DNA of 64,000 bases from the IMG/VR virus record IMGVR_UViG_3300049793_000366, positions 1-64,000 of that record; one strand, written 5' to 3'. This document shows, in pieces, positions 19,206 through 64,000 of the stretch (the stretch's first letter is position 1; every line of letters begins with the position of its first letter). A program made the position numbers and the translations under genes. Below the pieces are notes generated by a model. It was not told where the DNA came from. It saw only the letters and a list, made by a program, of their open reading frames with translations, and did not search any database.

Positions 19206-20408
19206 TTAGTTCTTATTTTCATAGATTGACTTCCTAACATCCAACATTAATTCGCCAACTAATTCGTGGTGAACTTCATCTGGGATATCGGCATTATCAA
19301 ATGCTTGGTCAATTTCTTTTATTTTCACTTCTGCTTCATTAATAAGAGTTTGTAAATCAACTTGTCCCTTTCTTATAGAAATTAAATATTGAGCATCCGG
19401 TCTTCTAACAATAACACCTTTCCCATCAGCTATCTCTTTAGCCATATTCAAAAGTCTTTGACAGTGTAACATATTCTTACCGTCTATTTTTTGACCATGT
19501 GCTTCAACATCTACCCAACGAGCATCGTTTTTGTTTTTCAACCAATCTTGATAAGACCTGTAATCATCGCAGTGCTGTGAATAACCATCCCTATTATATG
19601 AGATATAACCCAGAAATCCATCAGTATCTTTTGGTATAGAAGAAAGTCGTATTGTATTCGAATCTTCAAATGCAATACCCTTATATCCTTTACCTGGAGA
19701 CAGTTTGAATCCGTTCAAAGTAAGTAGGTTTGAAAGTTTAAATATAAACTTTGTTACTTTTCTCGCTCTTAATGATATCTTCTCAGAATGTAATGCAACT
19801 GAGTCATAATCATAAAACATAGAATAAACATCCCTTGCGTGTGGAAGAGCAGCTAAGCCACAAAACATTTGGTCAAGACCTCTATCTGTTAGATATTTAT
19901 TTAACGGAATAGATTTTTCACCAGCGAAAAAATATGCGAAGTCAATTGGATGTTTCCTTTCAACTTTACCCTTTTCCCAGTTTACTTTTTTATTCTGACC
20001 CTTTGCTTTAGAAATTTGTTGTCTCGCATAACCACCAAAACTCTGCTTACATTTTTTTGTAATGAATTTGTCTTTTTCTTTTAAAATTAATTCAAAAGCT
20101 GGGTGCTTATAGATTATACAATCTTCTGGTGTGTTTAACAGCTCAATCATTGTAGGATTGGCGGTTGCCAGTAATTCTAAGAATCTTTTCAATTCATAGA
20201 AAACTGTATCGTTCTTATCATCATTGACCTGCTCTTTATAATTATTACTTAGGATATCATCTTGACTTTGTATGTAAACACCAGCATAATCTTCATCAGA
20301 AGATGCAATATTTGTCCCATACGCATGAGAACCCCTTAGTGTAATAAACAGAGGGATGGCGTTTGGACAACGCTGGTGTATAAAGTCTTTGAAGTATTCT
20401 AATTTCAT
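19206..20408 (-). CDS. Pol-beta superfamily nucleotidyltransferase (RlaP/NrdC.11-like)
   Basis: GSHAYGTN..SDEDYAG, ANPTMIELL, FGGYA..Q, DGKNMLHCQRLL. Confidence 0.85.
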   Translation of the reverse strand: MKLEYFKDFIHQRCPNAIPLFITLRGSHAYGTNIASSDEDYAGVYIQSQDDILSNNYKEQVNDDKNDTVFYELKRFLELLATANPTMIELLNTPEDCIIYKHPAFELILKEKDKFITKKCKQSFGGYARQQISKAKGQNKKVNWEKGKVERKHPIDFAYFFAGEKSIPLNKYLTDRGLDQMFCGLAALPHARDVYSMFYDYDSVALHSEKISLRARKVTKFIFKLSNLLTLNGFKLSPGKGYKGIAFEDSNTIRLSSIPKDTDGFLGYISYNRDGYSQHCDDYRSYQDWLKNKNDARWVDVEAHGQKIDGKNMLHCQRLLNMAKEIADGKGVIVRRPDAQYLISIRKGQVDLQTLINEAEVKIKEIDQAFDNADIPDEVHHELVGELMLDVRKSIYENKN

Positions 20409-51774: not shown

Positions 51775-54003
51775 ATGAAAGAGAAAAACCTAAATATGCC
51801 TCAAACAGACTTCACACAGAGGTCAGAGTCATTGAAACGAGAACCAGAATTACTTAAACTCTGGAATGAGCTTGATGTACTTAAGCTTAGAAATGAATTA
51901 AATAGTGATACATTCACTTTACACGATGGACCGCCGTATGCTAACGGTGATGTTCACGTTGGTCACGTACTTAATAAAGTATTAAAAGATATGGTTGTTA
52001 AGTATCAACTAATGAGTGGTAAGAAAGTCAATTTCAGACCAGGATTTGACTGTCATGGTTTACCAACTGAATTAGCTGTTCTCAAAAAGCATGGCAAACT
52101 TGATGTGTCTGAACTGAGAGTTAAATGTAAAGAGTGGGCAACTGAGTATTCAGATAAGCAACGCGAATCATTTAAATCATTGGGTGTTTTCGCTGAATGG
52201 GATAACCCGTATTACACGATGTCACCTGAGTTCGAAGTTGGACAGCTTAAAGTATTATATAAGCTCTTAAACGATGGATTGATGTATCTTGATAGTAGAC
52301 CTGTGTATTACTCACCATCATCAAGAACTGTTTTAGCCGAATCAGAGCTTGAATATAAAAACAGAAAAGACAAATCTGCCTATTTCACCTTGGATGCCGA
52401 AGATGGTAGATTATTATTGGTTTGGACTACACAACCTTGGACAGCGTTAGGTAACGTAGCTGTTTGTGTTAATAACAGACTGACGTATGTAACAGTTGAA
52501 CAAGATTCTAAACTATATGTTGTTGCTAAGGATTTAGCTCACGTATTGAGTGGTGTTGTTGTAGATGAATATAGTGGTGAGAGTCTTGTTGGTCTTAAGT
52601 ATCACAATAAACTAACTAATACAGAGGGTGTTGTTGTGTCTGATAAATTCGTTAAGTCAAATAGTGGTACTGGTTTAGTACACTTATGTCCAGCACATGG
52701 TGAGGATGACTTCGATGTGTGTCAGAAACATAATCTATCATGTGATGATTTGACTGATTCTGGTGGTAAACTTCTTCTGAATGGGTTATTCTGTTTAGAC
52801 CAAGGTTCAGAGTCAGTTCTTGATATGATGAAAGAAAATGGTATGTTATATTCAACGTCTGAATATGAACACTCTTATCCACATGACTGGCGAACAAACG
52901 GACCTGTTTATTTTAAGCTAACTGAGCAATTCTTCCTTGATTTGGCTGAGTTAAAAGAGAAAGTATTAGCTGTCCTACCTACTGTTGATTTCACAGAAGA
53001 GCGTTGGAAAAACAGATTAACGAATATGTTGAATTTAAGAGACCGTTGGTGTTTATCGCGTCAAAGAAAATGGGGATTCCCTTTAGCTGTATTTCTTAAA
53101 GACGGTAAGCCATTTACGCATCCAGAATTAGAAGCTCACTTATTTGAGTTGTTTAAGCAGAATGGCTCTGATGTTTGGTTTAACTCAACAGAAGATGAAT
53201 TATTACCTGAGCAATTTAAGAATACTGGTTTAGTTAAGTGTGATTATACATTAGATGTGTGGTTTGATTCTGGTGTTAGTTGGTATTCAGTTGTGGGTGG
53301 TCAATCAGATGTTTACTTCGAAGGTTCAGACCAACACAGAGGTTGGTTTCAGTCTTCATTACTAACATCAGTAGCAATGACTGGTGAAGCACCTTACAAA
53401 AAAGTACTTACACACGGATTTGTATTGGATGATAAGGGAAGAAAGATGTCTAAATCATTAGGTAATGTTGTAGAACCAAAGACTGTTCAACAAAAGTATA
53501 ATACTGATGTGCTTAGATTGTGGGCGGCTGTTGTTAACTATGGTGATGATGCACAATTAGGTGATGGTGTGTTGAAGAGCTGTTCTGAATATTATTTCAA
53601 ATTTAGAAATACGCTTAAATATTTACTTGGTAATATGTATGGGTATGATTTTAGAGAGGTACAGCTAAATGAAAAAGATAGACTGGCTCTTACTCGATGT
53701 GATGCTATGTATAATAATTGTTTAAAGTCATATTCCGAGTATAACTTCAGAAAAGTATTTGAAGAATTAATGTCGTGGGTTTCAGAATTTTCAAGTCAGT
53801 ACTTAGACAATCAAACAAAATCCTTTTTATATGAATATGATGTTAATTCCGATGAACGTCAACAATGTCAATATGTTCTTAGGTATGCATTAGAGCGTTT
53901 TATGAAAGTACTTGCTCCTATGTGTTCATTTTTAGCAGAAGACGCTTATCAACATTATGAGTTCAAACAAGATGTTTCTGTATTTATGGAAAAAATGGAA
54001 TAA
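51775..54003 (+). CDS. ileS: isoleucine--tRNA ligase (type 1), C-terminally shortened
   Basis: HDGPPYANG, HVGH, PGFDCHGLP, WTTQPWT, GTGLVH.CPAHG.DD, WCLSRQRKWG, EGSDQHRGWFQSSL, KMSKSLGN. Confidence 0.95.
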   Translation: MKEKNLNMPQTDFTQRSESLKREPELLKLWNELDVLKLRNELNSDTFTLHDGPPYANGDVHVGHVLNKVLKDMVVKYQLMSGKKVNFRPGFDCHGLPTELAVLKKHGKLDVSELRVKCKEWATEYSDKQRESFKSLGVFAEWDNPYYTMSPEFEVGQLKVLYKLLNDGLMYLDSRPVYYSPSSRTVLAESELEYKNRKDKSAYFTLDAEDGRLLLVWTTQPWTALGNVAVCVNNRLTYVTVEQDSKLYVVAKDLAHVLSGVVVDEYSGESLVGLKYHNKLTNTEGVVVSDKFVKSNSGTGLVHLCPAHGEDDFDVCQKHNLSCDDLTDSGGKLLLNGLFCLDQGSESVLDMMKENGMLYSTSEYEHSYPHDWRTNGPVYFKLTEQFFLDLAELKEKVLAVLPTVDFTEERWKNRLTNMLNLRDRWCLSRQRKWGFPLAVFLKDGKPFTHPELEAHLFELFKQNGSDVWFNSTEDELLPEQFKNTGLVKCDYTLDVWFDSGVSWYSVVGGQSDVYFEGSDQHRGWFQSSLLTSVAMTGEAPYKKVLTHGFVLDDKGRKMSKSLGNVVEPKTVQQKYNTDVLRLWAAVVNYGDDAQLGDGVLKSCSEYYFKFRNTLKYLLGNMYGYDFREVQLNEKDRLALTRCDAMYNNCLKSYSEYNFRKVFEELMSWVSEFSSQYLDNQTKSFLYEYDVNSDERQQCQYVLRYALERFMKVLAPMCSFLAEDAYQHYEFKQDVSVFMEKME

Positions 54004-54042: not shown

Positions 54043-54471
54043 ATGAAGCATATAAAAACATTTGAACAATATTCACCAGCAACCGAAGTGAATGAAGAAC
54101 TATTTGGTAAATTATTACAAGGTGGTAAAGACTTCATCATCGATGGTAAATCGTTAGCAGAACTTAAAACTAAATATGCTAATGTAGTTAAAGATGGTCA
54201 GGTTATTTCTAAAGCTAAAGAACAACCACTTGTTACTATTGAAGAAGGTAAACCATTAAGAGGTAACCCACCTACGATGGCTCGTATTAAAGAACTTAAA
54301 GCAAAATATAACATGGATGATGCACAAGCTTTAGAAGCGACATTAAAGATTTACGATTGGAATGGTAACATTTTAATGGATGGTGAGAAGTCAACATTTG
54401 ACACTAACACTAAGAAGTTCACAGTTATTCAAGCTAAAAGCACAAGAGGAACAGGTTTTAACGTAAGTTAA
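54043..54471 (+). CDS. hypothetical protein, N-terminal MKHIKTFE family
   Basis: MKHIKTFEQY..EVNEE; TAATATATA at 54009. Confidence 0.7.
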   Translation: MKHIKTFEQYSPATEVNEELFGKLLQGGKDFIIDGKSLAELKTKYANVVKDGQVISKAKEQPLVTIEEGKPLRGNPPTMARIKELKAKYNMDDAQALEATLKIYDWNGNILMDGEKSTFDTNTKKFTVIQAKSTRGTGFNVS

Positions 54472-54947
54472 ACAATATAAAACTTTATTTGAAAATTACA
54501 GAAGCCGACCATACGATATCCGTACTGGTCGTTTTCTGTATATTGGTTAAACCCCTTCCATTCAATGATGTTATTCTTATATTCAGCGGGGTTATATGAA
54601 TTTTGTATTGTATCATTTATTTTAAACTCATACTGAGTCTTAAATCCGTCTTTTTCTAAAAACTTTCTTCTTCTATCTAATAATGTTTTGATAGTATCGA
54701 ATTCTTTTTTAGCATCATCTTCTGGTATTCTTCTTTTACAAACAATTAATAAATATCCTGCTCCTTTTTCTGGAATCAACTGATATCCTTCTTCTGCTAA
54801 TGGGAAAAATAATTCATGTTCTATTTGCTTTACGTCAGTCATGTTTCTAATCATGCGTCTTAAAGCATTGTGCAATTCGTCAAGAACACCACCTATTTTA
54901 TTGTAGTACTTATCATCAAATGATTCGAATGTTTCTAAATTTCTCAT
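54468..54947 (-). CDS. hypothetical protein, N-terminal MRNLETFESF
   Basis: N-terminal motif. Confidence 0.7.
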   Translation of the reverse strand: MRNLETFESFDDKYYNKIGGVLDELHNALRRMIRNMTDVKQIEHELFFPLAEEGYQLIPEKGAGYLLIVCKRRIPEDDAKKEFDTIKTLLDRRRKFLEKDGFKTQYEFKINDTIQNSYNPAEYKNNIIEWKGFNQYTENDQYGYRMVGFCNFQIKFYIV

Positions 54948-55696
54948 TCTACTAATTTTGGCATTGTATCTATTCGAGATTCTGCTAAATCCAATAGTTT
55001 TTCTTTATATGTGTTTAATGTTTGTAAATTACTTTCCGTTAACTCTTTTCTATTTAACATTGGTTCTAAATCCGGGTAATGTTTGATTATACCAGACTTT
55101 GTATAAGAATCTGGTTCATTACCATCGATTAGAGAAAAGAATTGACCAAACTGAAAAGCCATTACTTTATAGATATCTTTAATAGACTCTTTCTTTCCTG
55201 GAAAGTCAGTCATAGTTACGAAATCAATCTGTCTTATTACAGGAAGTTTTAATCTTAAATCGCCGCGCAATGCTGGTTTAACTACTGTTCTAAGATGAGA
55301 ACGAGAATAGAATGATAAGATACCTCTACACACTCTTAATAACTTTTGATTAGTGTCTCTTTGTACTACTGATTTTATTTGGTTATCAAAATATTGTTTG
55401 TGATTATCATAAGTATAATACAAAGCATTATTTACCTCATCAGCAGTGCCTTTGAATACTTTAACAATATGACCATTCTCAAGAACAGCTAAATTGCAGT
55501 TTAAAACCTTATCAGATAAAAGATTAGATAATTCAGCATTATAATGTTTACATATGTTATGAGCCGCATCAATATTTTGAGGAATATCATCAACAAATAT
55601 CATTACGTCATAGTCTTGACTATTCTCAGATCCAAAGATTTGAAAAACATAGTCTATATTTTCAGCCATTTCATTGAACTTTTTAAGATATTTCAT
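54944..55696 (-). CDS. putative Pol-beta-fold nucleotidyltransferase with MKYLKKFNE leader
   Basis: IFGSENSQDYDVMIFV fits hG[S]xxxxDxDhhh. Confidence 0.55.
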   Translation of the reverse strand: MKYLKKFNEMAENIDYVFQIFGSENSQDYDVMIFVDDIPQNIDAAHNICKHYNAELSNLLSDKVLNCNLAVLENGHIVKVFKGTADEVNNALYYTYDNHKQYFDNQIKSVVQRDTNQKLLRVCRGILSFYSRSHLRTVVKPALRGDLRLKLPVIRQIDFVTMTDFPGKKESIKDIYKVMAFQFGQFFSLIDGNEPDSYTKSGIIKHYPDLEPMLNRKELTESNLQTLNTYKEKLLDLAESRIDTMPKLVE

Positions 55697-56075
55697 TAAT
55701 GAGTAGTTTTATGTCAATTGTTTTAAATCTAAATAAAATTGATGTATAAGGACCCGTTAAATATTCAGAATTACCCTCTGTTAATTCTAACTCATATTTC
55801 TTAGCAAATTTAGTCAATTTATTTCTAATATCCTCAATTAATGGATCATTTATTATAAATTTAAAGTCATAGCAAATGTTACCGTATGAATCTTTAGCTA
55901 CTCTATCTTCATCTAAACCAGGATAGGGTTTTTTATATATAAATTGTACTTGTTCATCAGCGTCATATTCCTCAAACTCAATGTATAAAAGCCTTTCAAG
56001 TGAACCTTTAGCTACTGAAAAATCTGAAAATGTTACTTGATTTTCATTTATAAATTCGGAGTAGTTCTTCTTCAT
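55683..56075 (-). CDS. hypothetical protein, N-terminal MKKNYSEFINE
   Basis: CTS-like N-terminus; TTTATATATA upstream. Confidence 0.7.
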   Translation of the reverse strand: MKKNYSEFINENQVTFSDFSVAKGSLERLLYIEFEEYDADEQVQFIYKKPYPGLDEDRVAKDSYGNICYDFKFIINDPLIEDIRNKLTKFAKKYELELTEGNSEYLTGPYTSILFRFKTIDIKLLINEIS

Positions 56076-56111
56076 GTTGTATATATAAAGAAGAATTCTC
56101 GTTTTTTTATT

Positions 56112-56197: not shown

Positions 56198-56815
56198 ATG
56201 CCATTACCGCATTTTACAAACGTAACCAGTCATTTCGGTGATAACCAAGGTCCATTCGAAGCAGTGTACCCAGGGTTATTCGAGATATCATTTGTTTTGC
56301 CTGCTACATTAGTAGCTCAAAATAGAGATCCATTAATGTTGTTAGAAAACGCAACTAACATTTCAGGATTCGAGTTAACACCAACTATCAATGAGCAGTC
56401 TCAAAGATTCAAGTACTCTACTAGAGTTTACTTACCTCTTCCTGAGAAGACTCACACTACGTTTGATATTACATTCAACGTAAATGTGAATCACGCTGGT
56501 TCTATGTACACATGGAATACACTTAGGTCTTGGTATGACTTACTTTGGAATTCACAAGTAGGTACTAACTTCTACAAAAGAGATATGGTAGGTACTGTTA
56601 TCGTTAACCAACACGATAAGAAAGGTTTCATCATTAGAAGAATCACTTTCCACAATACTCAAATTAAAGGTATTGATGGTGCTGTATCTGAACTTGACTG
56701 GTCAAAAACTGGTGATATCGTAACTGGAACAAAGGCATCTTTCGTATGTGATTACTGGACTGATGAATGGATTGATCCAAACTACGCTCAAGTATTACCA
56801 CCATTATCGGTATAA
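56198..56815 (+). CDS. tail tube protein (T4 gp19-like)
   Basis: MPLPHF start, FEISF..P, ITFNVN, LRSWYDL..N, ELDW, F.CDYW; TAATATATA upstream. Confidence 0.7.
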   Translation: MPLPHFTNVTSHFGDNQGPFEAVYPGLFEISFVLPATLVAQNRDPLMLLENATNISGFELTPTINEQSQRFKYSTRVYLPLPEKTHTTFDITFNVNVNHAGSMYTWNTLRSWYDLLWNSQVGTNFYKRDMVGTVIVNQHDKKGFIIRRITFHNTQIKGIDGAVSELDWSKTGDIVTGTKASFVCDYWTDEWIDPNYAQVLPPLSV

Positions 56816-56862: not shown

Positions 56863-57459
56863 ATGAAACATTTAAAGTCTTTTCAGATGTTTGAAAACGA
56901 AGGGCAAGTAGCCCCAGCAGAAGCTACAAAAGCACCTGCTGAAATGCCAGTTGACAGAGCGGCTGTTGAAGCTGTTGTTAAAAAGCAATCACCAGAGCAA
57001 TTACAACAATTTGTTAATGAGTTAGCACAGAAACTTGGTTTAAGTGTCGAACAACTTAAAGACGAAGAGTTGGTTAAGTCTAAATTGGCTGAATTGACAA
57101 AGAATGAATCTTTTGAAGTTGATGAGACAAATGAAGGTTTAAAAGATATGTTTGCTTCTTTAAAAGCTAAAGCTGCTAAAATACTTACTTGGGCTGGTTT
57201 AGGTACAGTGGCGGGTGGTCTTATTAATTTGGCAATTGATGCTGGATTTAACGAACACGCTATAAACGCGGCTGATTATACAGGTGCTACATTACACATG
57301 AGTAGTATGGCAATAGCTTCAATTATAGCTTTGGTAGCTGGTACTGCAATGACTGTTGTTGGTATGAAGAATCTACCAAAAACTGCGACAGCGGGTGCTG
57401 AGTTATCCGATGCTCAAAAAGCTCAAATAGCAAGAAGAAAAGCAAGATTTGGTAGATAA
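56863..57459 (+). CDS. membrane-segment protein with MKHLKSFQMFE leader
   Basis: Alternative start 56839 (MKNIKSID); acidic N-half with NES/NEG sites; two C-terminal hydrophobic helices. Confidence 0.7.
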   Translation: MKHLKSFQMFENEGQVAPAEATKAPAEMPVDRAAVEAVVKKQSPEQLQQFVNELAQKLGLSVEQLKDEELVKSKLAELTKNESFEVDETNEGLKDMFASLKAKAAKILTWAGLGTVAGGLINLAIDAGFNEHAINAADYTGATLHMSSMAIASIIALVAGTAMTVVGMKNLPKTATAGAELSDAQKAQIARRKARFGR

Positions 57460-57677
57460 TGAAACACTTACAATCATTTAACGAACATAACGCTACACCT
57501 GCAATCTACCACAGTAGAATTACAAAGGGTAAGACCAAAGTCTCTTATGATGATAAAAAGGGTGTTATAATTGACACTGATGTAGACTCAGAAAAAATAC
57601 TAAACGTACACATCAAATATGAAGATGGTACTGATGGATGGGAAGTCGCTGATGATACTAAGATGAAATACATTTAA
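57459..57677 (+). CDS. small protein, N-terminal MKHLQSFNE
   Basis: N-terminal motif. Confidence 0.7.
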   Translation: MKHLQSFNEHNATPAIYHSRITKGKTKVSYDDKKGVIIDTDVDSEKILNVHIKYEDGTDGWEVADDTKMKYI

Positions 57678-58249: not shown

Positions 58250-59197
58250 TTAGTTAAGCTTAATACCCGTTACTGGGTCATAGTTTAAAATAAGAATTTC
58301 TAAACCTTTTGTTTGTTCTCCTTTATTTTCGTGATTATTACCACCTTGAGCAGAACTTCTGAATACTTCCTTTTCAGTCCAGTAGTATTTATCTCTTGGT
58401 AGAATTTCTTCAAGTAATGGGAAATAGTAATATGATAATGACCAACGACTCTTAGTAGTTTTCAATAACTCTAATAATCTTCTATGTGATTGAGGTCCAA
58501 ATACACCCTCAGCATCACAGCCATACCAAAATAATCTACGAGCATCATCTTCGCCTTTCTCTTCGTTAAATCTCGCATATGGAGGGTCTAAGTAGATATA
58601 AGTATCATCAGCATCATATTTAGTAATAAGCTCTTCAAAATCGATGTTATACCAATTGGTGATTGAATTAAGTTTGTCTGTGTATGTATTCTTTTTAAGT
58701 TTATTGATTAAAATCTCTAACTTAAGTTTGTCGTGAGATTTCTTATAACCATTGAAACCAGCACCGCGAGGATATACTGAATTATGAGCAGATGTAATTA
58801 AGAAAGCATACATAGCCGCTTTTTCAAAGTCACCAATCTCAAAGTCTGAATTATCTAAGAAGTCATTCTTAACATACTCTCTGTATATTGCTTTAAAGAA
58901 ATCCCATTTCTTTAAAGGGTCTGTTTCAGTAGTGAATAATACTGTTGATTTAAGTTTATCAATAGCATTAAGCATTTTCTCTGGTTCAGAGCAACATCTA
59001 TAAAGATTTACTTGATGCCTATTTTTATCATTGTAGACAACCGTATCAAATATAAGTGATGGGTCATCCATATATGTTCCCATTGAACCGCTAAATGGTT
59101 CGAGATATGTGTTTATACCACTTTTGGGTATTTTAGAGTTAATGAACTCAATAAAGGCGTTTGATGATTTACCACCGAAATAACTGATAACAGACAT
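58250..59197 (-). CDS. DNA adenine methyltransferase (Dam/D12 class)
   Basis: ISYFGGKS, EPFSGS, VYND, IYLDPPY. Confidence 0.88.
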   Translation of the reverse strand: MSVISYFGGKSSNAFIEFINSKIPKSGINTYLEPFSGSMGTYMDDPSLIFDTVVYNDKNRHQVNLYRCCSEPEKMLNAIDKLKSTVLFTTETDPLKKWDFFKAIYREYVKNDFLDNSDFEIGDFEKAAMYAFLITSAHNSVYPRGAGFNGYKKSHDKLKLEILINKLKKNTYTDKLNSITNWYNIDFEELITKYDADDTYIYLDPPYARFNEEKGEDDARRLFWYGCDAEGVFGPQSHRRLLELLKTTKSRWSLSYYYFPLLEEILPRDKYYWTEKEVFRSSAQGGNNHENKGEQTKGLEILILNYDPVTGIKLN

Positions 59198-63204: not shown

Positions 63205-64000
63205 TTATGGGTTTAAGAAACCACCTGACTGAATAGCACCAGTTCTAAGAACCGTAACGTTATTCACAATAACACCCATACCTTTTATCGGTTCAACATA
63301 AGTATCTAAGACACCAAATTGATTATCGATAATTTCAGAAGTATTATTTTCTTCGTCAATCTTATTGAAGAAATTAAATAAACCATTTCTGTTTACAAAT
63401 CTCTCGCAGATTGCGTCAGCTTTTAACTTAATCTCTGCTCTAACATCTGGAGTATTGTACTTCCATTGGTAGTTTAATAACATAGCAGCTATTTCTTTCT
63501 CAAGCTCAATTAGAACCTCTCTAACGTGAATGAATGATAAAGCTGACCTTAATAATGTCTGAGCAGTGTTTTCAGTTTCAATTACGAAACCTCTGTTCTT
63601 CTTAGACACGATTGGATTGGCGTGCATTCCATTCAAGTTTTCAATGTCTTCTGAGTTGAAATTCATCTCAAGAGCGCCGATACCAGTAACAACACCGTTA
63701 GTAACACCAGCCGCGATTGTCCAAGGCGTAACGTTAGTTTGATTGCTGTTAATCTTTCTCATATACGTTGTCGCAACGAATGATGCTGGTGGGAATTCAG
63801 TAGGTCTTCCATTATCGTTTATGATAACATAAGGAGCGAAATAACCAACTGTTGACACACCTGCTCCTTCTGCGAAAGAGTATAAGAATGCTGGGCTTGA
63901 CTCAGGATCTCCACCTAAAGCTATATAGCTTGTTTGTAGAACACCTTCTGTATTTACGAATGTAGGTGATGTAGAGTTCTTAAAGCTTCTCATAGAAGGC
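63205..64000 (-). CDS. tail sheath protein, C-terminal part (T4 gp18-like); extends beyond the window
   Basis: PPASFVA, PWTIAAG..G, ANPIV, SALSFIHVREVLI, DEENNT.EIIDN, YVEPIK. Confidence 0.88.
   Translation of the reverse strand, partial: PSMRSFKNSTSPTFVNTEGVLQTSYIALGGDPESSPAFLYSFAEGAGVSTVGYFAPYVIINDNGRPTEFPPASFVATTYMRKINSNQTNVTPWTIAAGVTNGVVTGIGALEMNFNSEDIENLNGMHANPIVSKKNRGFVIETENTAQTLLRSALSFIHVREVLIELEKEIAAMLLNYQWKYNTPDVRAEIKLKADAICERFVNRNGLFNFFNKIDEENNTSEIIDNQFGVLDTYVEPIKGMGVIVNNVTVLRTGAIQSGGFLNP

What the first reader, a model, noticed from the sequence alone, without database searches (positions are those of the whole stretch)
54944..55696. Putative nucleotidyltransferase carrying the capsid-type leader
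Seen: MKYLKKFNE followed immediately by IFGSENSQDYDVMIFV (GS..DxD) and a helical C-terminal part, in a run of three tagged genes. Inference: a virion-delivered NMP transferase that modifies host proteins, RNA or signalling nucleotides at entry, analogous in role to T4 Alt but with different chemistry.
Basis: inference. Interest (0 to 1): 0.6.

Follow-up and report, generated by a model that had tools for sequence, protein, structure and literature searches.

The report
Tagged nucleotidyltransferase of a huge phage
A soil megaphage gene encodes an uncharacterised nucleotidyltransferase-fold enzyme that starts with a short tag resembling phage T4's capsid-targeting peptide, a tag found on about a tenth of this phage's genes, so the phage may load many proteins into its head, though this is untested.

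Summary
The ORF (54944-55696, minus strand, 250 aa) is real. It reads MKYLKKFNE, then ten residues, then the FGS-x4-DYD motif.

Enzyme:
- It has no Pfam, PHROG or PDB sequence match.
- The AlphaFold model is confident (pLDDT 93.8). Its best matches in four fold or feature searches are Pol-beta-type nucleotidyltransferases with a helical C-domain (HalB, ANT(9)/AadA, NTP_transf_2 clusters).
- G22, S23, D28, D30, D86 and E87 are about invariant across a family of 751 clusters.
- In the phage collection only genomes of 440 kb or more hold it. Structural relatives also occur in klosneuvirus-like giant viruses.

Leader:
- About 84 of 725 genes carry it, in 77 unrelated families, and almost never internally.
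- It resembles the T4 capsid-targeting sequence MKTYQEFIAE.
- The genome has a T4-type portal, gp21-like protease and gp23-like capsid protein.
- Tagged genes share an ATATATA box with the head and sheath genes.

Limits:
- Most family members lack the tag, and it was gained or lost several times, so the enzyme's core role does not depend on it.
- Packaging, cleavage and substrate are untested.

Verdict: the nucleotidyltransferase call is supported. Virion delivery is plausible and unproven.

The parts
54944..55696 (-). ORF of 250 aa (plus stop): the tagged nucleotidyltransferase-fold protein.
   Evidence: ORF list. 236 word-search homologues. 751 clusters at 50% identity. AlphaFold model with pLDDT 93.8.
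55670..55696 (-). Codons 1-9, the leader MKYLKKFNE (T4-CTS-like tag). E9 and E12 are candidate cleavage points.
   Evidence: Its leader PSSM score of 31.0 is the fifth highest in the genome. Residues 1-10 have pLDDT 47, so the leader is modelled with low confidence, unlike the confident enzyme domain. The T4 CTS is MKTYQEFIAE.
55667..55669 (-). In-frame ATG for Met10. It is a possible alternative start giving an untagged enzyme of the length of the leaderless homologues.
   Evidence: Sequence. The stop of the upstream gene (55683-55685) lies 13 nt before it. Met10 is kept in the two closest homologues.
55382..55654 (-). N-terminal alpha/beta domain (residues ~15-105) with the catalytic-type residues.
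   Evidence: Strands 17-21, 28-35, 64-73 and 76-80; helices 42-56 and 85-98. It aligns to the NTase domains of HalB, ANT(3'')(9) and AAD(9).
55604..55636 (-). Residues 21-31, FGSENSQDYDV: the hG[GS] and DxD motifs, only four residues apart.
   Evidence: Invariant in A1 and at least 90% conserved in A2.
55436..55441 (-). D86-E87, a conserved acidic pair at the start of helix 85-98. It is a candidate third carboxylate or catalytic base.
   Evidence: At least 90% conserved in A2. The comparison with the catalytic Glu of AadA-type enzymes is inference from memory and was not superposed here.
54947..55360 (-). C-terminal helical domain (residues 113-250), rich in conserved Arg and Lys (R113, K118, R121, R124, R136, K140, K177, K200, R216).
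   Evidence: Helices 115-244. It aligns to the AadA_C/KNTase-type and HEPN-like bundles. Conservation.
55683..56075 (-). Upstream gene of the same operon, 130 aa. Its leader MKKNYSEFINE is the closest in the window to the T4 CTS.
   Evidence: A weak PHROG 'internal virion protein' match covers residues 3-25 (E 0.093).
54468..54947 (-). Downstream gene of the same operon, 159 aa, leader MRNLETFESF. It overlaps the NTase stop by 4 nt.
56080..56086 (-). ATATATA box, 11 nt upstream of the ATG (56075) of the first gene of the three-gene operon. Read as a late-promoter-like element.
   Evidence: Sequence. -11/-12 is the modal position of this box before tagged genes. The same box precedes the portal, protease, MCP and sheath genes.
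54043..54471 (+). Neighbouring tagged gene, 142 aa, MKHIKTFEQY.
56863..57459 (+). Neighbouring tagged gene, 198 aa from the tagged Met, MKHLKSFQMFE.
57459..57677 (+). Neighbouring tagged gene, 72 aa, MKHLQSFNEH.

Best explanation
The gene encodes an active two-domain nucleotidyltransferase of the Pol-beta fold: an N-terminal alpha/beta domain with G22-S23, D28, D30 and D86/E87, plus a C-terminal basic helical bundle. It belongs to a large family that has no Pfam model or annotation. In the phage collection searched here, only phages of 440 kb or more hold this family.

In this lineage the enzyme has acquired the clade's portable N-terminal tag (MK[HY]LKxF[NE]E), which resembles the T4 capsid-targeting sequence.

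The proposed pathway is all inference:
1. The three-gene operon is transcribed late, from an ATATATA box shared with the head and sheath genes.
2. The tag docks the protein into the scaffold core of the T4-type prohead.
3. The gp21-like protease clips the tag after a Glu (E9 or E12). This leaves a protein equal to the leaderless homologues.
4. The enzyme travels with the DNA into the next Bacteroidota host and transfers an NMP there.

The acceptor is most likely anionic: an RNA or tRNA end, or a nucleotide. This follows from the conserved Arg/Lys surface and from the recurrent RNA-repair and translation genes nearby.

Rough odds: NTase enzyme 0.8; tag is a capsid-targeting signal 0.5; nucleic-acid or nucleotide acceptor 0.4. 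The confidence given for this entry is for the NTase call and the capsid-targeting call together.
For: Fold and motif:
- AlphaFold model with pLDDT 93.8.
- Foldseek on PDB: the top matches are ANT(9), AadA, HalB, LinB and CD-NTases, with probability 0.9-0.97.
- VIA-align: HalB Z 7.7, ANT(3'')(9) Z 7.5, AAD(9) Z 7.2, then DrrA, GlnE and ANT(4').
- ESM Atlas: TM 0.50-0.56 to PF01909 + AadA_C clusters, and a feature score of 0.93 to PF01909/PF18765 clusters.
- BFVD: Ralstonia phage RP12 'nucleotidyl transferase domain' at E 6e-4, and true relatives at E 1e-11 to 3e-14.
- Invariant GS/DxD/DE residues.

Tag:
- It is specific to N-termini.
- It sits on 77 unrelated families.
- Leu4 uses TTA, CTT, CTA and ATT codons, so selection acts on the peptide.
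- It resembles the T4 CTS.
- The genome has a T4-type portal (PF07230, E 9e-59), protease (phrog_207, E 6e-30; aligned to CC31 gp21 at E 2e-6 with the HP and SSR motifs) and MCP (PF07068, E 5e-27).
- An ATATATA box lies before 47 of 84 tagged genes against 115 of 641 untagged genes (p 7e-13). It also precedes the portal, protease, MCP and sheath genes, but not the DNA polymerase, IleRS or RlaP genes.
- Tagged genes cluster: 27 adjacent pairs against 9.7 expected.

Substrate hints:
- A class I aaRS lies near the gene in the window and in L033.
- RNA ligase, Thg1, RlaP and PTH2 are neighbours in other loci.
- There is one natural fusion to a PNKP-like HAD phosphatase.
Against: - No sequence-level link to any curated NTase family. 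No Pfam family is above threshold. PF18765 appears in only 3 of 134 members, at E 0.012. hhalign against the RlaP family gives probability 0.2%.
- The fold Z-scores of 7-8 lie in the range that the tool itself calls middling.
- The GS-to-DxD spacing is 4 residues, with no helix between the two strands. This is atypical.
- The usual third carboxylate strand carries N66 and N68.
- Most family members have no tag. This includes relatives in genomes that use the tag on other genes and the homologues in phage G and LR756504.
- Tag state changed at least 3-7 times among close homologues.
- A tag on 10% of all genes is far more than in T4.
- Tagged proteins are acidic (median pI 5.3), whereas T4 internal proteins are basic.
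- No virion proteome, no RNA data and no known cleavage specificity exist. The T4 gp23 cleavage site is not conserved in the MCP alignment.
- Neighbourhood hints are weak, because huge phages are full of such genes and no neighbour is conserved.
Confidence: 0.4

Rival explanations
1. The enzyme is a cytoplasmic nucleotidyltransferase that works during infection, for example in RNA/tRNA repair or nucleotide metabolism. The shared leader is not a capsid-targeting signal. It would serve something else common to about 80 late genes: efficient initiation on near-leaderless mRNAs, a degradation or timing signal, or docking to another assembly.
For: - The family is mostly leaderless, and the tag is labile.
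- The box sits 11-12 nt before the ATG, which implies very short 5' leaders. The first codons could therefore be under selection for translation.
- Tagged proteins are acidic and very numerous, unlike T4 internal proteins.
- A PolyA_pol/CCA-type enzyme carries a weak form of the tag.
Against: - Synonymous Leu codons from two codon families, with conserved L4, F7 and an acidic residue at 8-9, point to selection on the peptide rather than the RNA.
- The tag resembles the T4 CTS, in a genome with T4-type head machinery.
- Promoter-like boxes are shared with the head and sheath genes.
- The tag is modelled with low confidence (pLDDT 47), unlike the domain it precedes.
Confidence: 0.3
2. In this particular gene the real product starts at Met10. 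The upstream nine codons are then a relic, or a minor alternative start, so the enzyme is untagged in practice.
For: - Met10 is in frame and lies 13 nt after the stop of the upstream gene, a good position for coupled re-initiation.
- It would give an N-terminus like those of the leaderless homologues.
Against: - The nine codons score fifth best of all leaders in the genome.
- They are kept in the 84-85% identical homologues.
- 75 of 116 close homologues carry a tag, most without an internal Met.
Confidence: 0.1
3. The enzyme counters a nucleotide-based host defence. It might make or modify a signalling oligonucleotide, for instance by mimicking the HalB enzyme of the Hailong system, whose product keeps the effector shut. 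Alternatively it might nucleotidylate a defence protein.
For: - HalB is the top structural match, though only marginally: Z 7.7 against 7.5 for ANT.
- CD-NTases appear among the Foldseek matches.
- Delivery at entry would suit a counter-defence protein.
- PARG-like and GmrSD_N genes are neighbours in two loci.
Against: - The HalB match is not distinguishable from the ANT matches.
- No sequence similarity.
- No conserved partner genes.
- The family is confined to very large viruses, including eukaryotic giant viruses. This fits a housekeeping role better than a counter to one bacterial system.
Confidence: 0.1
4. It is an ANT-like small-molecule O-nucleotidyltransferase acting on an aminoglycoside or lincosamide-type compound.
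For: ANT(9), AadA, LinB and ANT(4') are among the best fold matches, with the same two-domain layout.
Against: - The conserved residues of the helical domain are Arg and Lys rather than the acidic pocket expected for cationic antibiotics (inference).
- Identity to these enzymes is only 6-11%.
- The distribution in megaphages and giant viruses makes drug modification unlikely.
Confidence: 0.04

Closest known systems
AadA / ANT(9) / ANT(4') aminoglycoside nucleotidyltransferases and LinB (Pol-beta NTase domain plus AadA_C/KNTase_C helical domain)
   Same: They share the two-domain layout and size (about 250 aa), the GS and DxD residues on adjacent strands, and a conserved acidic residue after the sheet. 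They are top fold matches.
   Different: Identity is 6-11% and there is no profile match. The GS-DxD loop has 4 residues with no helix. The conserved surface is basic. The family occurs in giant viruses and megaphages, not as a resistance gene.
HalB, the oligodeoxyadenylate-forming NTase of the Hailong defence system (PDB 9DBH)
   Same: It is the best VIA-align match (Z 7.7, 167 residues aligned) and the third Foldseek match. It is a small NTase plus helical domain acting on nucleotides.
   Different: Identity is 11%. The score is not separable from the ANT matches. There is no HalA-like partner nearby.
T4 capsid-targeting sequence (MKTYQEFIAE) of internal proteins IPI-III
   Same: A roughly 10-residue N-terminal peptide starting MK, with an aromatic or aliphatic residue at position 4, Phe at 7 and Glu at 9-10. 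It is portable between unrelated proteins. The genome has a gp20-like portal, a gp21-like protease and a gp23-like MCP.
   Different: It sits on about 84 genes instead of a handful. The tagged proteins are acidic rather than basic. Packaging and cleavage are unproven. The tag is present in only some Mahaphage-clade genomes.
T4 Alt (packaged ADP-ribosyltransferase)
   Same: Only the proposed role: an enzyme carried in the head and injected with the DNA.
   Different: The fold and chemistry are different. Alt has its own propeptide. Nothing here shows injection or a host target.
RlaP (PF10127), the RNA-repair-pathway NTase, also encoded in this window at 19206-20408
   Same: It belongs to the Pol-beta superfamily, is phage-encoded, and is a neighbour of the leaderless homologue in L008.
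   Different: No profile-profile similarity (probability 0.2%). RlaP has the usual long GS-to-DxD spacing and no tag.

Membership tests
Pol-beta superfamily nucleotidyltransferases | Alpha/beta core fold (mixed sheet flanked by helices) shared with solved NTases | tested here: met
   The top matches in PDB (Foldseek probability 0.9-0.97; VIA Z 7.2-7.7 over 167-180 residues), in ESM Atlas (TM 0.50-0.56 to PF01909 clusters) and by language-model features (0.93) are all NTases. The scores are moderate.
Pol-beta superfamily nucleotidyltransferases | hG[GS] motif at the end of the first strand | tested here: met
   F21-G22-S23 is invariant in A1 and at least 90% conserved in A2.
Pol-beta superfamily nucleotidyltransferases | [DE]h[DE]h on the next strand, usually 9-13 residues after GS with a helix between | tested here: inconclusive
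   D28-Y-D30-V is conserved and lies on strand 28-35. However, it sits only 4 residues after GS, with no intervening helix. The usual spacing is stated from general knowledge.
Pol-beta superfamily nucleotidyltransferases | Third carboxylate on a following strand | tested here: inconclusive
   Strand 64-73 carries the conserved N66 and N68, not an acid. The conserved D86 and E87 sit at the start of helix 85-98. No residue-level superposition was available.
Pol-beta superfamily nucleotidyltransferases | Significant match to a curated family profile (PF01909, PF18765, PF10127 ...) | tested here: not met
   No Pfam hit for the query. PF18765 appears in 3 of 134 members at E 0.012. hhalign against RlaP gives probability 0.2%. 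The PDB profile search found nothing.
Pol-beta superfamily nucleotidyltransferases | Metal-dependent NMP transfer | not testable with these tools
   Needs an enzyme assay.
T4-type capsid-targeted (CTS) head proteins | Short N-terminal peptide like MKTYQEFIAE, ending in Glu | tested here: met
   MKYLKKFNE here. The genome consensus is MK[HY]LKxF[EN]E. The neighbour reads MKKNYSEFINE.
T4-type capsid-targeted (CTS) head proteins | The same peptide on otherwise unrelated proteins (portable signal) | tested here: met
   84 tagged genes fall into 77 BLAST families once the first 15 residues are removed. The NTase family exists with and without the tag.
T4-type capsid-targeted (CTS) head proteins | T4-type prohead machinery in the same genome (gp20 portal, gp21 protease, scaffold, gp23 MCP) | tested here: met
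   PF07230 at E 9e-59. phrog_207 at E 6e-30, with an alignment to CC31 gp21 at E 2e-6. PF07068 at E 5e-27.
T4-type capsid-targeted (CTS) head proteins | Late expression together with head genes | tested here: inconclusive
   Tagged genes share an ATATATA box with the portal, protease, MCP and sheath genes. No transcript data exist.
T4-type capsid-targeted (CTS) head proteins | Presence in virions with the tag removed by the prohead protease | not testable with these tools
   The phage is uncultured and no particle proteome exists. The supplement of the phage G proteome paper is not held, and phage G lacks the tag anyway.
T4 internal proteins (IPI-III) | Small, highly basic DNA-associated proteins | tested here: not met
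   Tagged proteins have a median pI of 5.3. The NTase has pI 6.3, or 5.9 without the tag.
T4 Alt-type ADP-ribosyltransferase | ART fold | tested here: not met
   No ART among the fold matches. The fold is NTase-like.

The most novel reading that the evidence does not exclude
A subset of the largest known phages (this genome, LR756502, LR756504 and LR756500) uses a T4-like capsid-targeting peptide as a general address label. In this reading, 50 to more than 100 unrelated and mostly unknown proteins per genome are loaded into the prohead and injected with the DNA. They would include enzymes such as this nucleotidyltransferase and an ankyrin-repeat protein. This would be a protein payload far larger and more diverse than in any studied phage. 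The label would also give a sequence-only way to read the injected proteome of uncultured megaphages.
Probability: 0.35. Interest if true: 0.8.

Novelty: new variant of a known kind. Interest (0 to 1): 0.6.

Why it matters
If the tag is a capsid address, it marks from sequence alone which proteins uncultured megaphages carry into the cell. These would include an enzyme of a large, unnamed family found in the phage collection only in genomes of 440 kb or more. Structural relatives also occur in klosneuvirus-like giant viruses, which, from general knowledge, encode expanded translation machinery.

That would make two open questions testable: what huge phages do with their extra genes at the moment of entry, and what this conserved nucleotidyltransferase acts on.

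If the tag is not an address, it is still an unexplained N-terminal signal on a tenth of the proteome.

Tried and rejected
- Sequence searches for the query gave nothing usable: Pfam, PHROGs and PDB. A more diverse profile against PDB also failed.
- Profile-profile comparison with the RlaP family built from the window's own RlaP gene showed no relation.
- Near-identical DNA in the phage collection: none found.
- PF03420 searched in the genome rang nowhere, controls included. The protease was found instead by reading the head region and scanning that protein.
- PF05065, PF17289 and PF02867 searched in the genome: no match.
- Conserved gene neighbours of the enzyme across loci: none. Context hints are therefore weak.
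- Inferring the protease's cleavage rule from the MCP propeptide: the T4-type site is not conserved in the alignment.
- Phage G particle proteome for gp208: it is not in the text and the supplements are not held. Phage G has an HK97/lambda-type head according to that paper, so it would not test the tag.
- Pfam and PHROG scans of 20 larger tagged proteins: almost all are orphans. One has ankyrin repeats and one weakly tagged protein has a PolyA_pol head domain.
- Public runs: only the source soil metagenome holds the stretch and there are no RNA runs.
- One malformed call returned an error.
- No complex prediction was run. No alternative genetic code was needed.
Full report
**1. What is at the coordinates**

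An ATG-initiated ORF of 250 codons lies at 54944-55696 on the minus strand. It reads MKYLKKFNE, then MAENIDYVFQ, then IFGSENSQDYDVMIFV. The motif is therefore present, but it begins ten residues after the leader and not immediately. Residue 10 is an in-frame Met.

The gene is the middle one of three overlapping minus-strand genes:
- 55683-56075 starts MKKNYSEFINE.
- 54468-54947 starts MRNLETFESF.
- The overlaps are 14 nt and 4 nt.

Three further tagged genes lie on the plus strand at 54043, 56863 and 57459.

**2. The genome**

The window is the first 64 kb of a 507,910-bp virus record with 33% G+C. The same protein also sits on a 711,805-bp contig. The only public run that holds the stretch is the source soil metagenome.

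The genome has a T4-type head module:
- A portal (PF07230, E 9e-59).
- A 757-aa protease-plus-scaffold-like protein (phrog_207, E 6e-30; PF03420 weak).
- A gp23-like major capsid protein (PF07068, E 5e-27).

The N-terminal domain of the protease protein aligns with gp21 of the T4 relative CC31 (E 2e-6), including the HP and SSR(G/A) motifs. The capsid protein is 53-65% identical to those of the 634-735 kb phages of Al-Shayeb et al. It is more distantly related to those of Lak phages, Tenacibaculum phage PTm1 and cyanophages. These largest genomes form the Mahaphage clade, predicted to infect Bacteroidetes (PMC7162821).

**3. The enzyme**

Sequence searches are silent:
- No Pfam family, no PHROG and no PDB sequence match.
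- A profile of 134 diverse members also finds nothing in PDB.
- Only 3 of 134 members touch PF18765 (Polbeta), at E 0.012.
- hhalign against the RlaP NTase family, built from the window's own RlaP gene, finds no relation.

The family is nevertheless large and strongly constrained:
- 236 word-search hits.
- 751 clusters at 50% identity with E up to 0.001, of which 546 have E up to 1e-10.
- In 134 representatives sharing only 31-51% identity with the query, these residues are at least 90% conserved: G22, S23, S26, D28, D30, N68, K82, G83, D86, E87, N89, N90, T95, H99, Q101, R113, K118, R121, R124, R136, K140, K177, Q182, Q185, Y198, K200 and R216.

An AlphaFold model built on 58 sequences is confident (pLDDT 93.8, pTM 0.87). 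It has three parts:
- A low-confidence N-terminal helix, the leader.
- A four-stranded alpha/beta domain (residues 15-105).
- A helical bundle (residues 115-244).

Fold and feature searches agree on the class:

| Search | Best matches |
|---|---|
| Foldseek, PDB | ANT(9), AadA, HalB, LinB, ANT(4'), CD-NTases (E 6e-3 to 0.1, probability up to 0.97) |
| VIA-align, 48,161 chains | HalB Z 7.7; ANT(3'')(9) Z 7.5; AAD(9) Z 7.2; then DrrA, GlnE, ANT(4') |
| ESM Atlas fold search | TM 0.50-0.56 to clusters with PF01909 + AadA_C |
| ESM Atlas features | Top named clusters all PF01909/PF18765, score 0.93 |

The scores are moderate, and the tool warns that a Z of 7-8 can be a common arrangement. However, every line of evidence points to the same class, and the class-defining residues are the invariant ones.

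Two features are atypical:
- GS and DxD are only four residues apart, on a tight hairpin with no helix between.
- The strand that usually holds the third carboxylate carries N66 and N68. The conserved acids D86 and E87 sit at the start of the next helix. By memory this is where AadA-type enzymes place their catalytic base. It was not superposed here.

I therefore call it a new, unnamed family or variant of the Pol-beta NTase fold, very probably active.

**4. Distribution and hints to function**

In 50,697 phage records, only 19 hold a homologue, and all are 440 kb or larger: an uncultured 636-kb phage, 15 Lak phage records, the two Bacillus phage G records (gp208) and Salicola phage SCTP-2.

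BFVD adds clear structural relatives inside larger proteins of Indivirus, Terrestrivirus and Klosneuvirus (E about 1e-11, TM 0.7).

The genes nearby differ from locus to locus. They repeatedly include translation and RNA-repair genes:
- A class I aaRS in the window and in L033.
- Thg1, RlaP and PTH2 in L008.
- RNA ligase in L035.
- A PARG-like gene overlapping the 3' end in L010.
- One natural fusion to a PNKP-like HAD phosphatase.

Together with the conserved Arg/Lys surface, this makes an anionic acceptor the best guess: an RNA or tRNA end, or a nucleotide. It remains a guess.

**5. The leader**

It is real:
- A strict pattern starts 40 of 725 crude genes and never occurs internally in 155,111 residues.
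- Two looser patterns mark 84 genes, against 13 of 1998 internal Met positions.
- After removal of the first 15 residues, the 84 proteins fall into 77 unrelated BLAST families. The leader is therefore a portable module and not the head of a paralogue family.
- Leu4 is encoded by TTA, CTT, CTA and ATT, and Phe7 by TTT and TTC. Selection is on the peptide.
- Tagged genes cluster: 27 adjacent pairs against 9.7 expected.

The consensus MK[HY]LKxF[EN]E, the second register MxxxYxxFxxE and the neighbour's MKKNYSEFINE all resemble the T4 capsid-targeting sequence MKTYQEFIAE. That sequence is cut once by gp21 and can carry foreign proteins into T4 heads (PMC8442874; PMC5694885).

A DNA pattern for the leader shows which genomes use it:

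| Genome | Matches | Reversed-pattern control |
|---|---|---|
| This genome | 53 | 3 |
| LR756502 | 116 | 6 |
| LR756504 | 44 | 11 |
| LR756500 | 33 | 2 |
| Lak-A1 | 14 | 7 |
| PTm1 | 5 | 0 |
| Phage G | 4 | 2 |
| SCTP-2 | 4 | 3 |
| LR756501 (735 kb) | 2 | 4 |

The last five are near background.

**6. An independent link to late or structural expression**

An ATATATA box lies within 45 nt upstream of 47 of 84 tagged genes, against 115 of 641 untagged genes (p 7e-13). Before tagged genes it is sharply placed 11-12 nt ahead of the ATG.

The same box precedes the portal, protease, capsid and tail-sheath genes at -29 to -39. It is absent before the DNA polymerase, IleRS, RlaP and clamp-loader-like genes.

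The three-gene operon containing the NTase has the box at 56080-56086, 11 nt before its first ATG.

**7. What weakens the virion-delivery reading**

- The enzyme family is mostly leaderless.
- Among the 116 closest homologues, 75 are tagged and 41 are not, with at least 7 changes of state on a quick tree (at least 3 forced by well-supported branches).
- Leaderless homologues at 58-65% identity sit in genomes that use the same tag on neighbouring genes.
- Met10 could give an untagged product.
- Tagged proteins are acidic (median pI 5.3), unlike the basic T4 internal proteins.
- A tag on a tenth of all genes has no precedent.
- The capsid protein itself lacks this leader, so 'capsid-type' is a misnomer.
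- No proteome or transcript data exist.

**8. Verdict**

- The NTase inference is supported at the level of fold and motif.
- The tag is a genuine, portable, T4-CTS-like signal, in a genome with the matching head machinery and with late-type promoter boxes.
- Delivery in the virion is a reasonable but untested hypothesis (about 0.5).
- The target is unknown.
- The analogy with T4 Alt is one of role only.

Noticed in passing
window 56080-56086 and genome-wide (e.g. before genome 91592, 93393, 95750, 66996): An ATATATA (often TAATATATA) box precedes many genes in two position classes. One class lies 11-12 nt before the ATG, mostly at tagged small genes, which implies near-leaderless mRNAs. The other lies 25-39 nt before the portal, protease, capsid, sheath and many very large genes. 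It looks like the late promoter of this phage clade.
   Followed up: partly
window 51775-54003 (+): A 742-aa class I aminoacyl-tRNA synthetase (PF00133, E 3e-110, with an anticodon-binding domain) lies next to the tagged-gene cluster. A class I aaRS also lies near the leaderless homologue in L033.
   Followed up: partly
window 19206-20408 (-): A second, unrelated nucleotidyltransferase of the RlaP type (PF10127, E 1.5e-17; phrog_388). It is untagged, with 2914 word-search relatives, many on contigs of 200-700 kb.
   Followed up: partly
window 56198-56815 (+): An untagged 205-aa protein in the middle of the tagged cluster (phrog_32623, unknown function, E 3e-21), preceded by the box at -33. By eye its ends resemble T4 gp19-type tail-tube proteins. 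This is a recollection and was not tested.
   Followed up: no
window 63205-64000, continuing to genome 66996 (-): A 1263-aa ORF with a weak tail-sheath match (PF04984, E 8.5e-5) runs off the window end.
   Followed up: partly
window 58250-59197 (-): A D12-class N6-adenine DNA methyltransferase (PF02086, E 1.7e-13).
   Followed up: no
genome 67641-69392 (-), locus L028: A tagged 583-aa protein (MNLRKYNDFINKE) with C-terminal ankyrin repeats (PF12796, E 1.6e-20). If the tag means packaging, it is a candidate injected host-interaction protein.
   Followed up: partly
genome 118224-119441 (+), locus L027: A PolyA_pol/CCA-adding-type enzyme (PF01743, E 9e-28) begins with a weak form of the leader (MTKIQKFFQFNES). 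If genuine, a housekeeping tRNA enzyme also carries the tag.
   Followed up: partly
genome 93393-95666 (+) and 97610-98959 (+), locus L006: The prohead protease is fused to a long acidic scaffold-like C-terminal part (757 aa), as annotated in Tenacibaculum phage PTm1. An M28-family peptidase-like gene (phrog_4191, E 1e-68) follows the capsid gene.
   Followed up: partly
whole record: The collection labels the 507,910-bp record a 'provirus', while the same proteins lie on contigs of 709-712 kb. The provirus call may be a trimming artefact on a huge phage genome.
   Followed up: no
LR756502.1 (e.g. 10-36 kb and 418-426 kb): This 642-kb relative has 116 leader-pattern matches, many in dense tandem arrays of small genes that start MKHLK..Y. 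This suggests rapid expansion of tagged gene cassettes.
   Followed up: no
BFVD matches to the model: Proteins of 478-1039 aa from Indivirus, Terrestrivirus and Klosneuvirus contain a domain with this fold (E about 1e-11). The family therefore spans bacterial megaphages and eukaryotic giant viruses.
   Followed up: no
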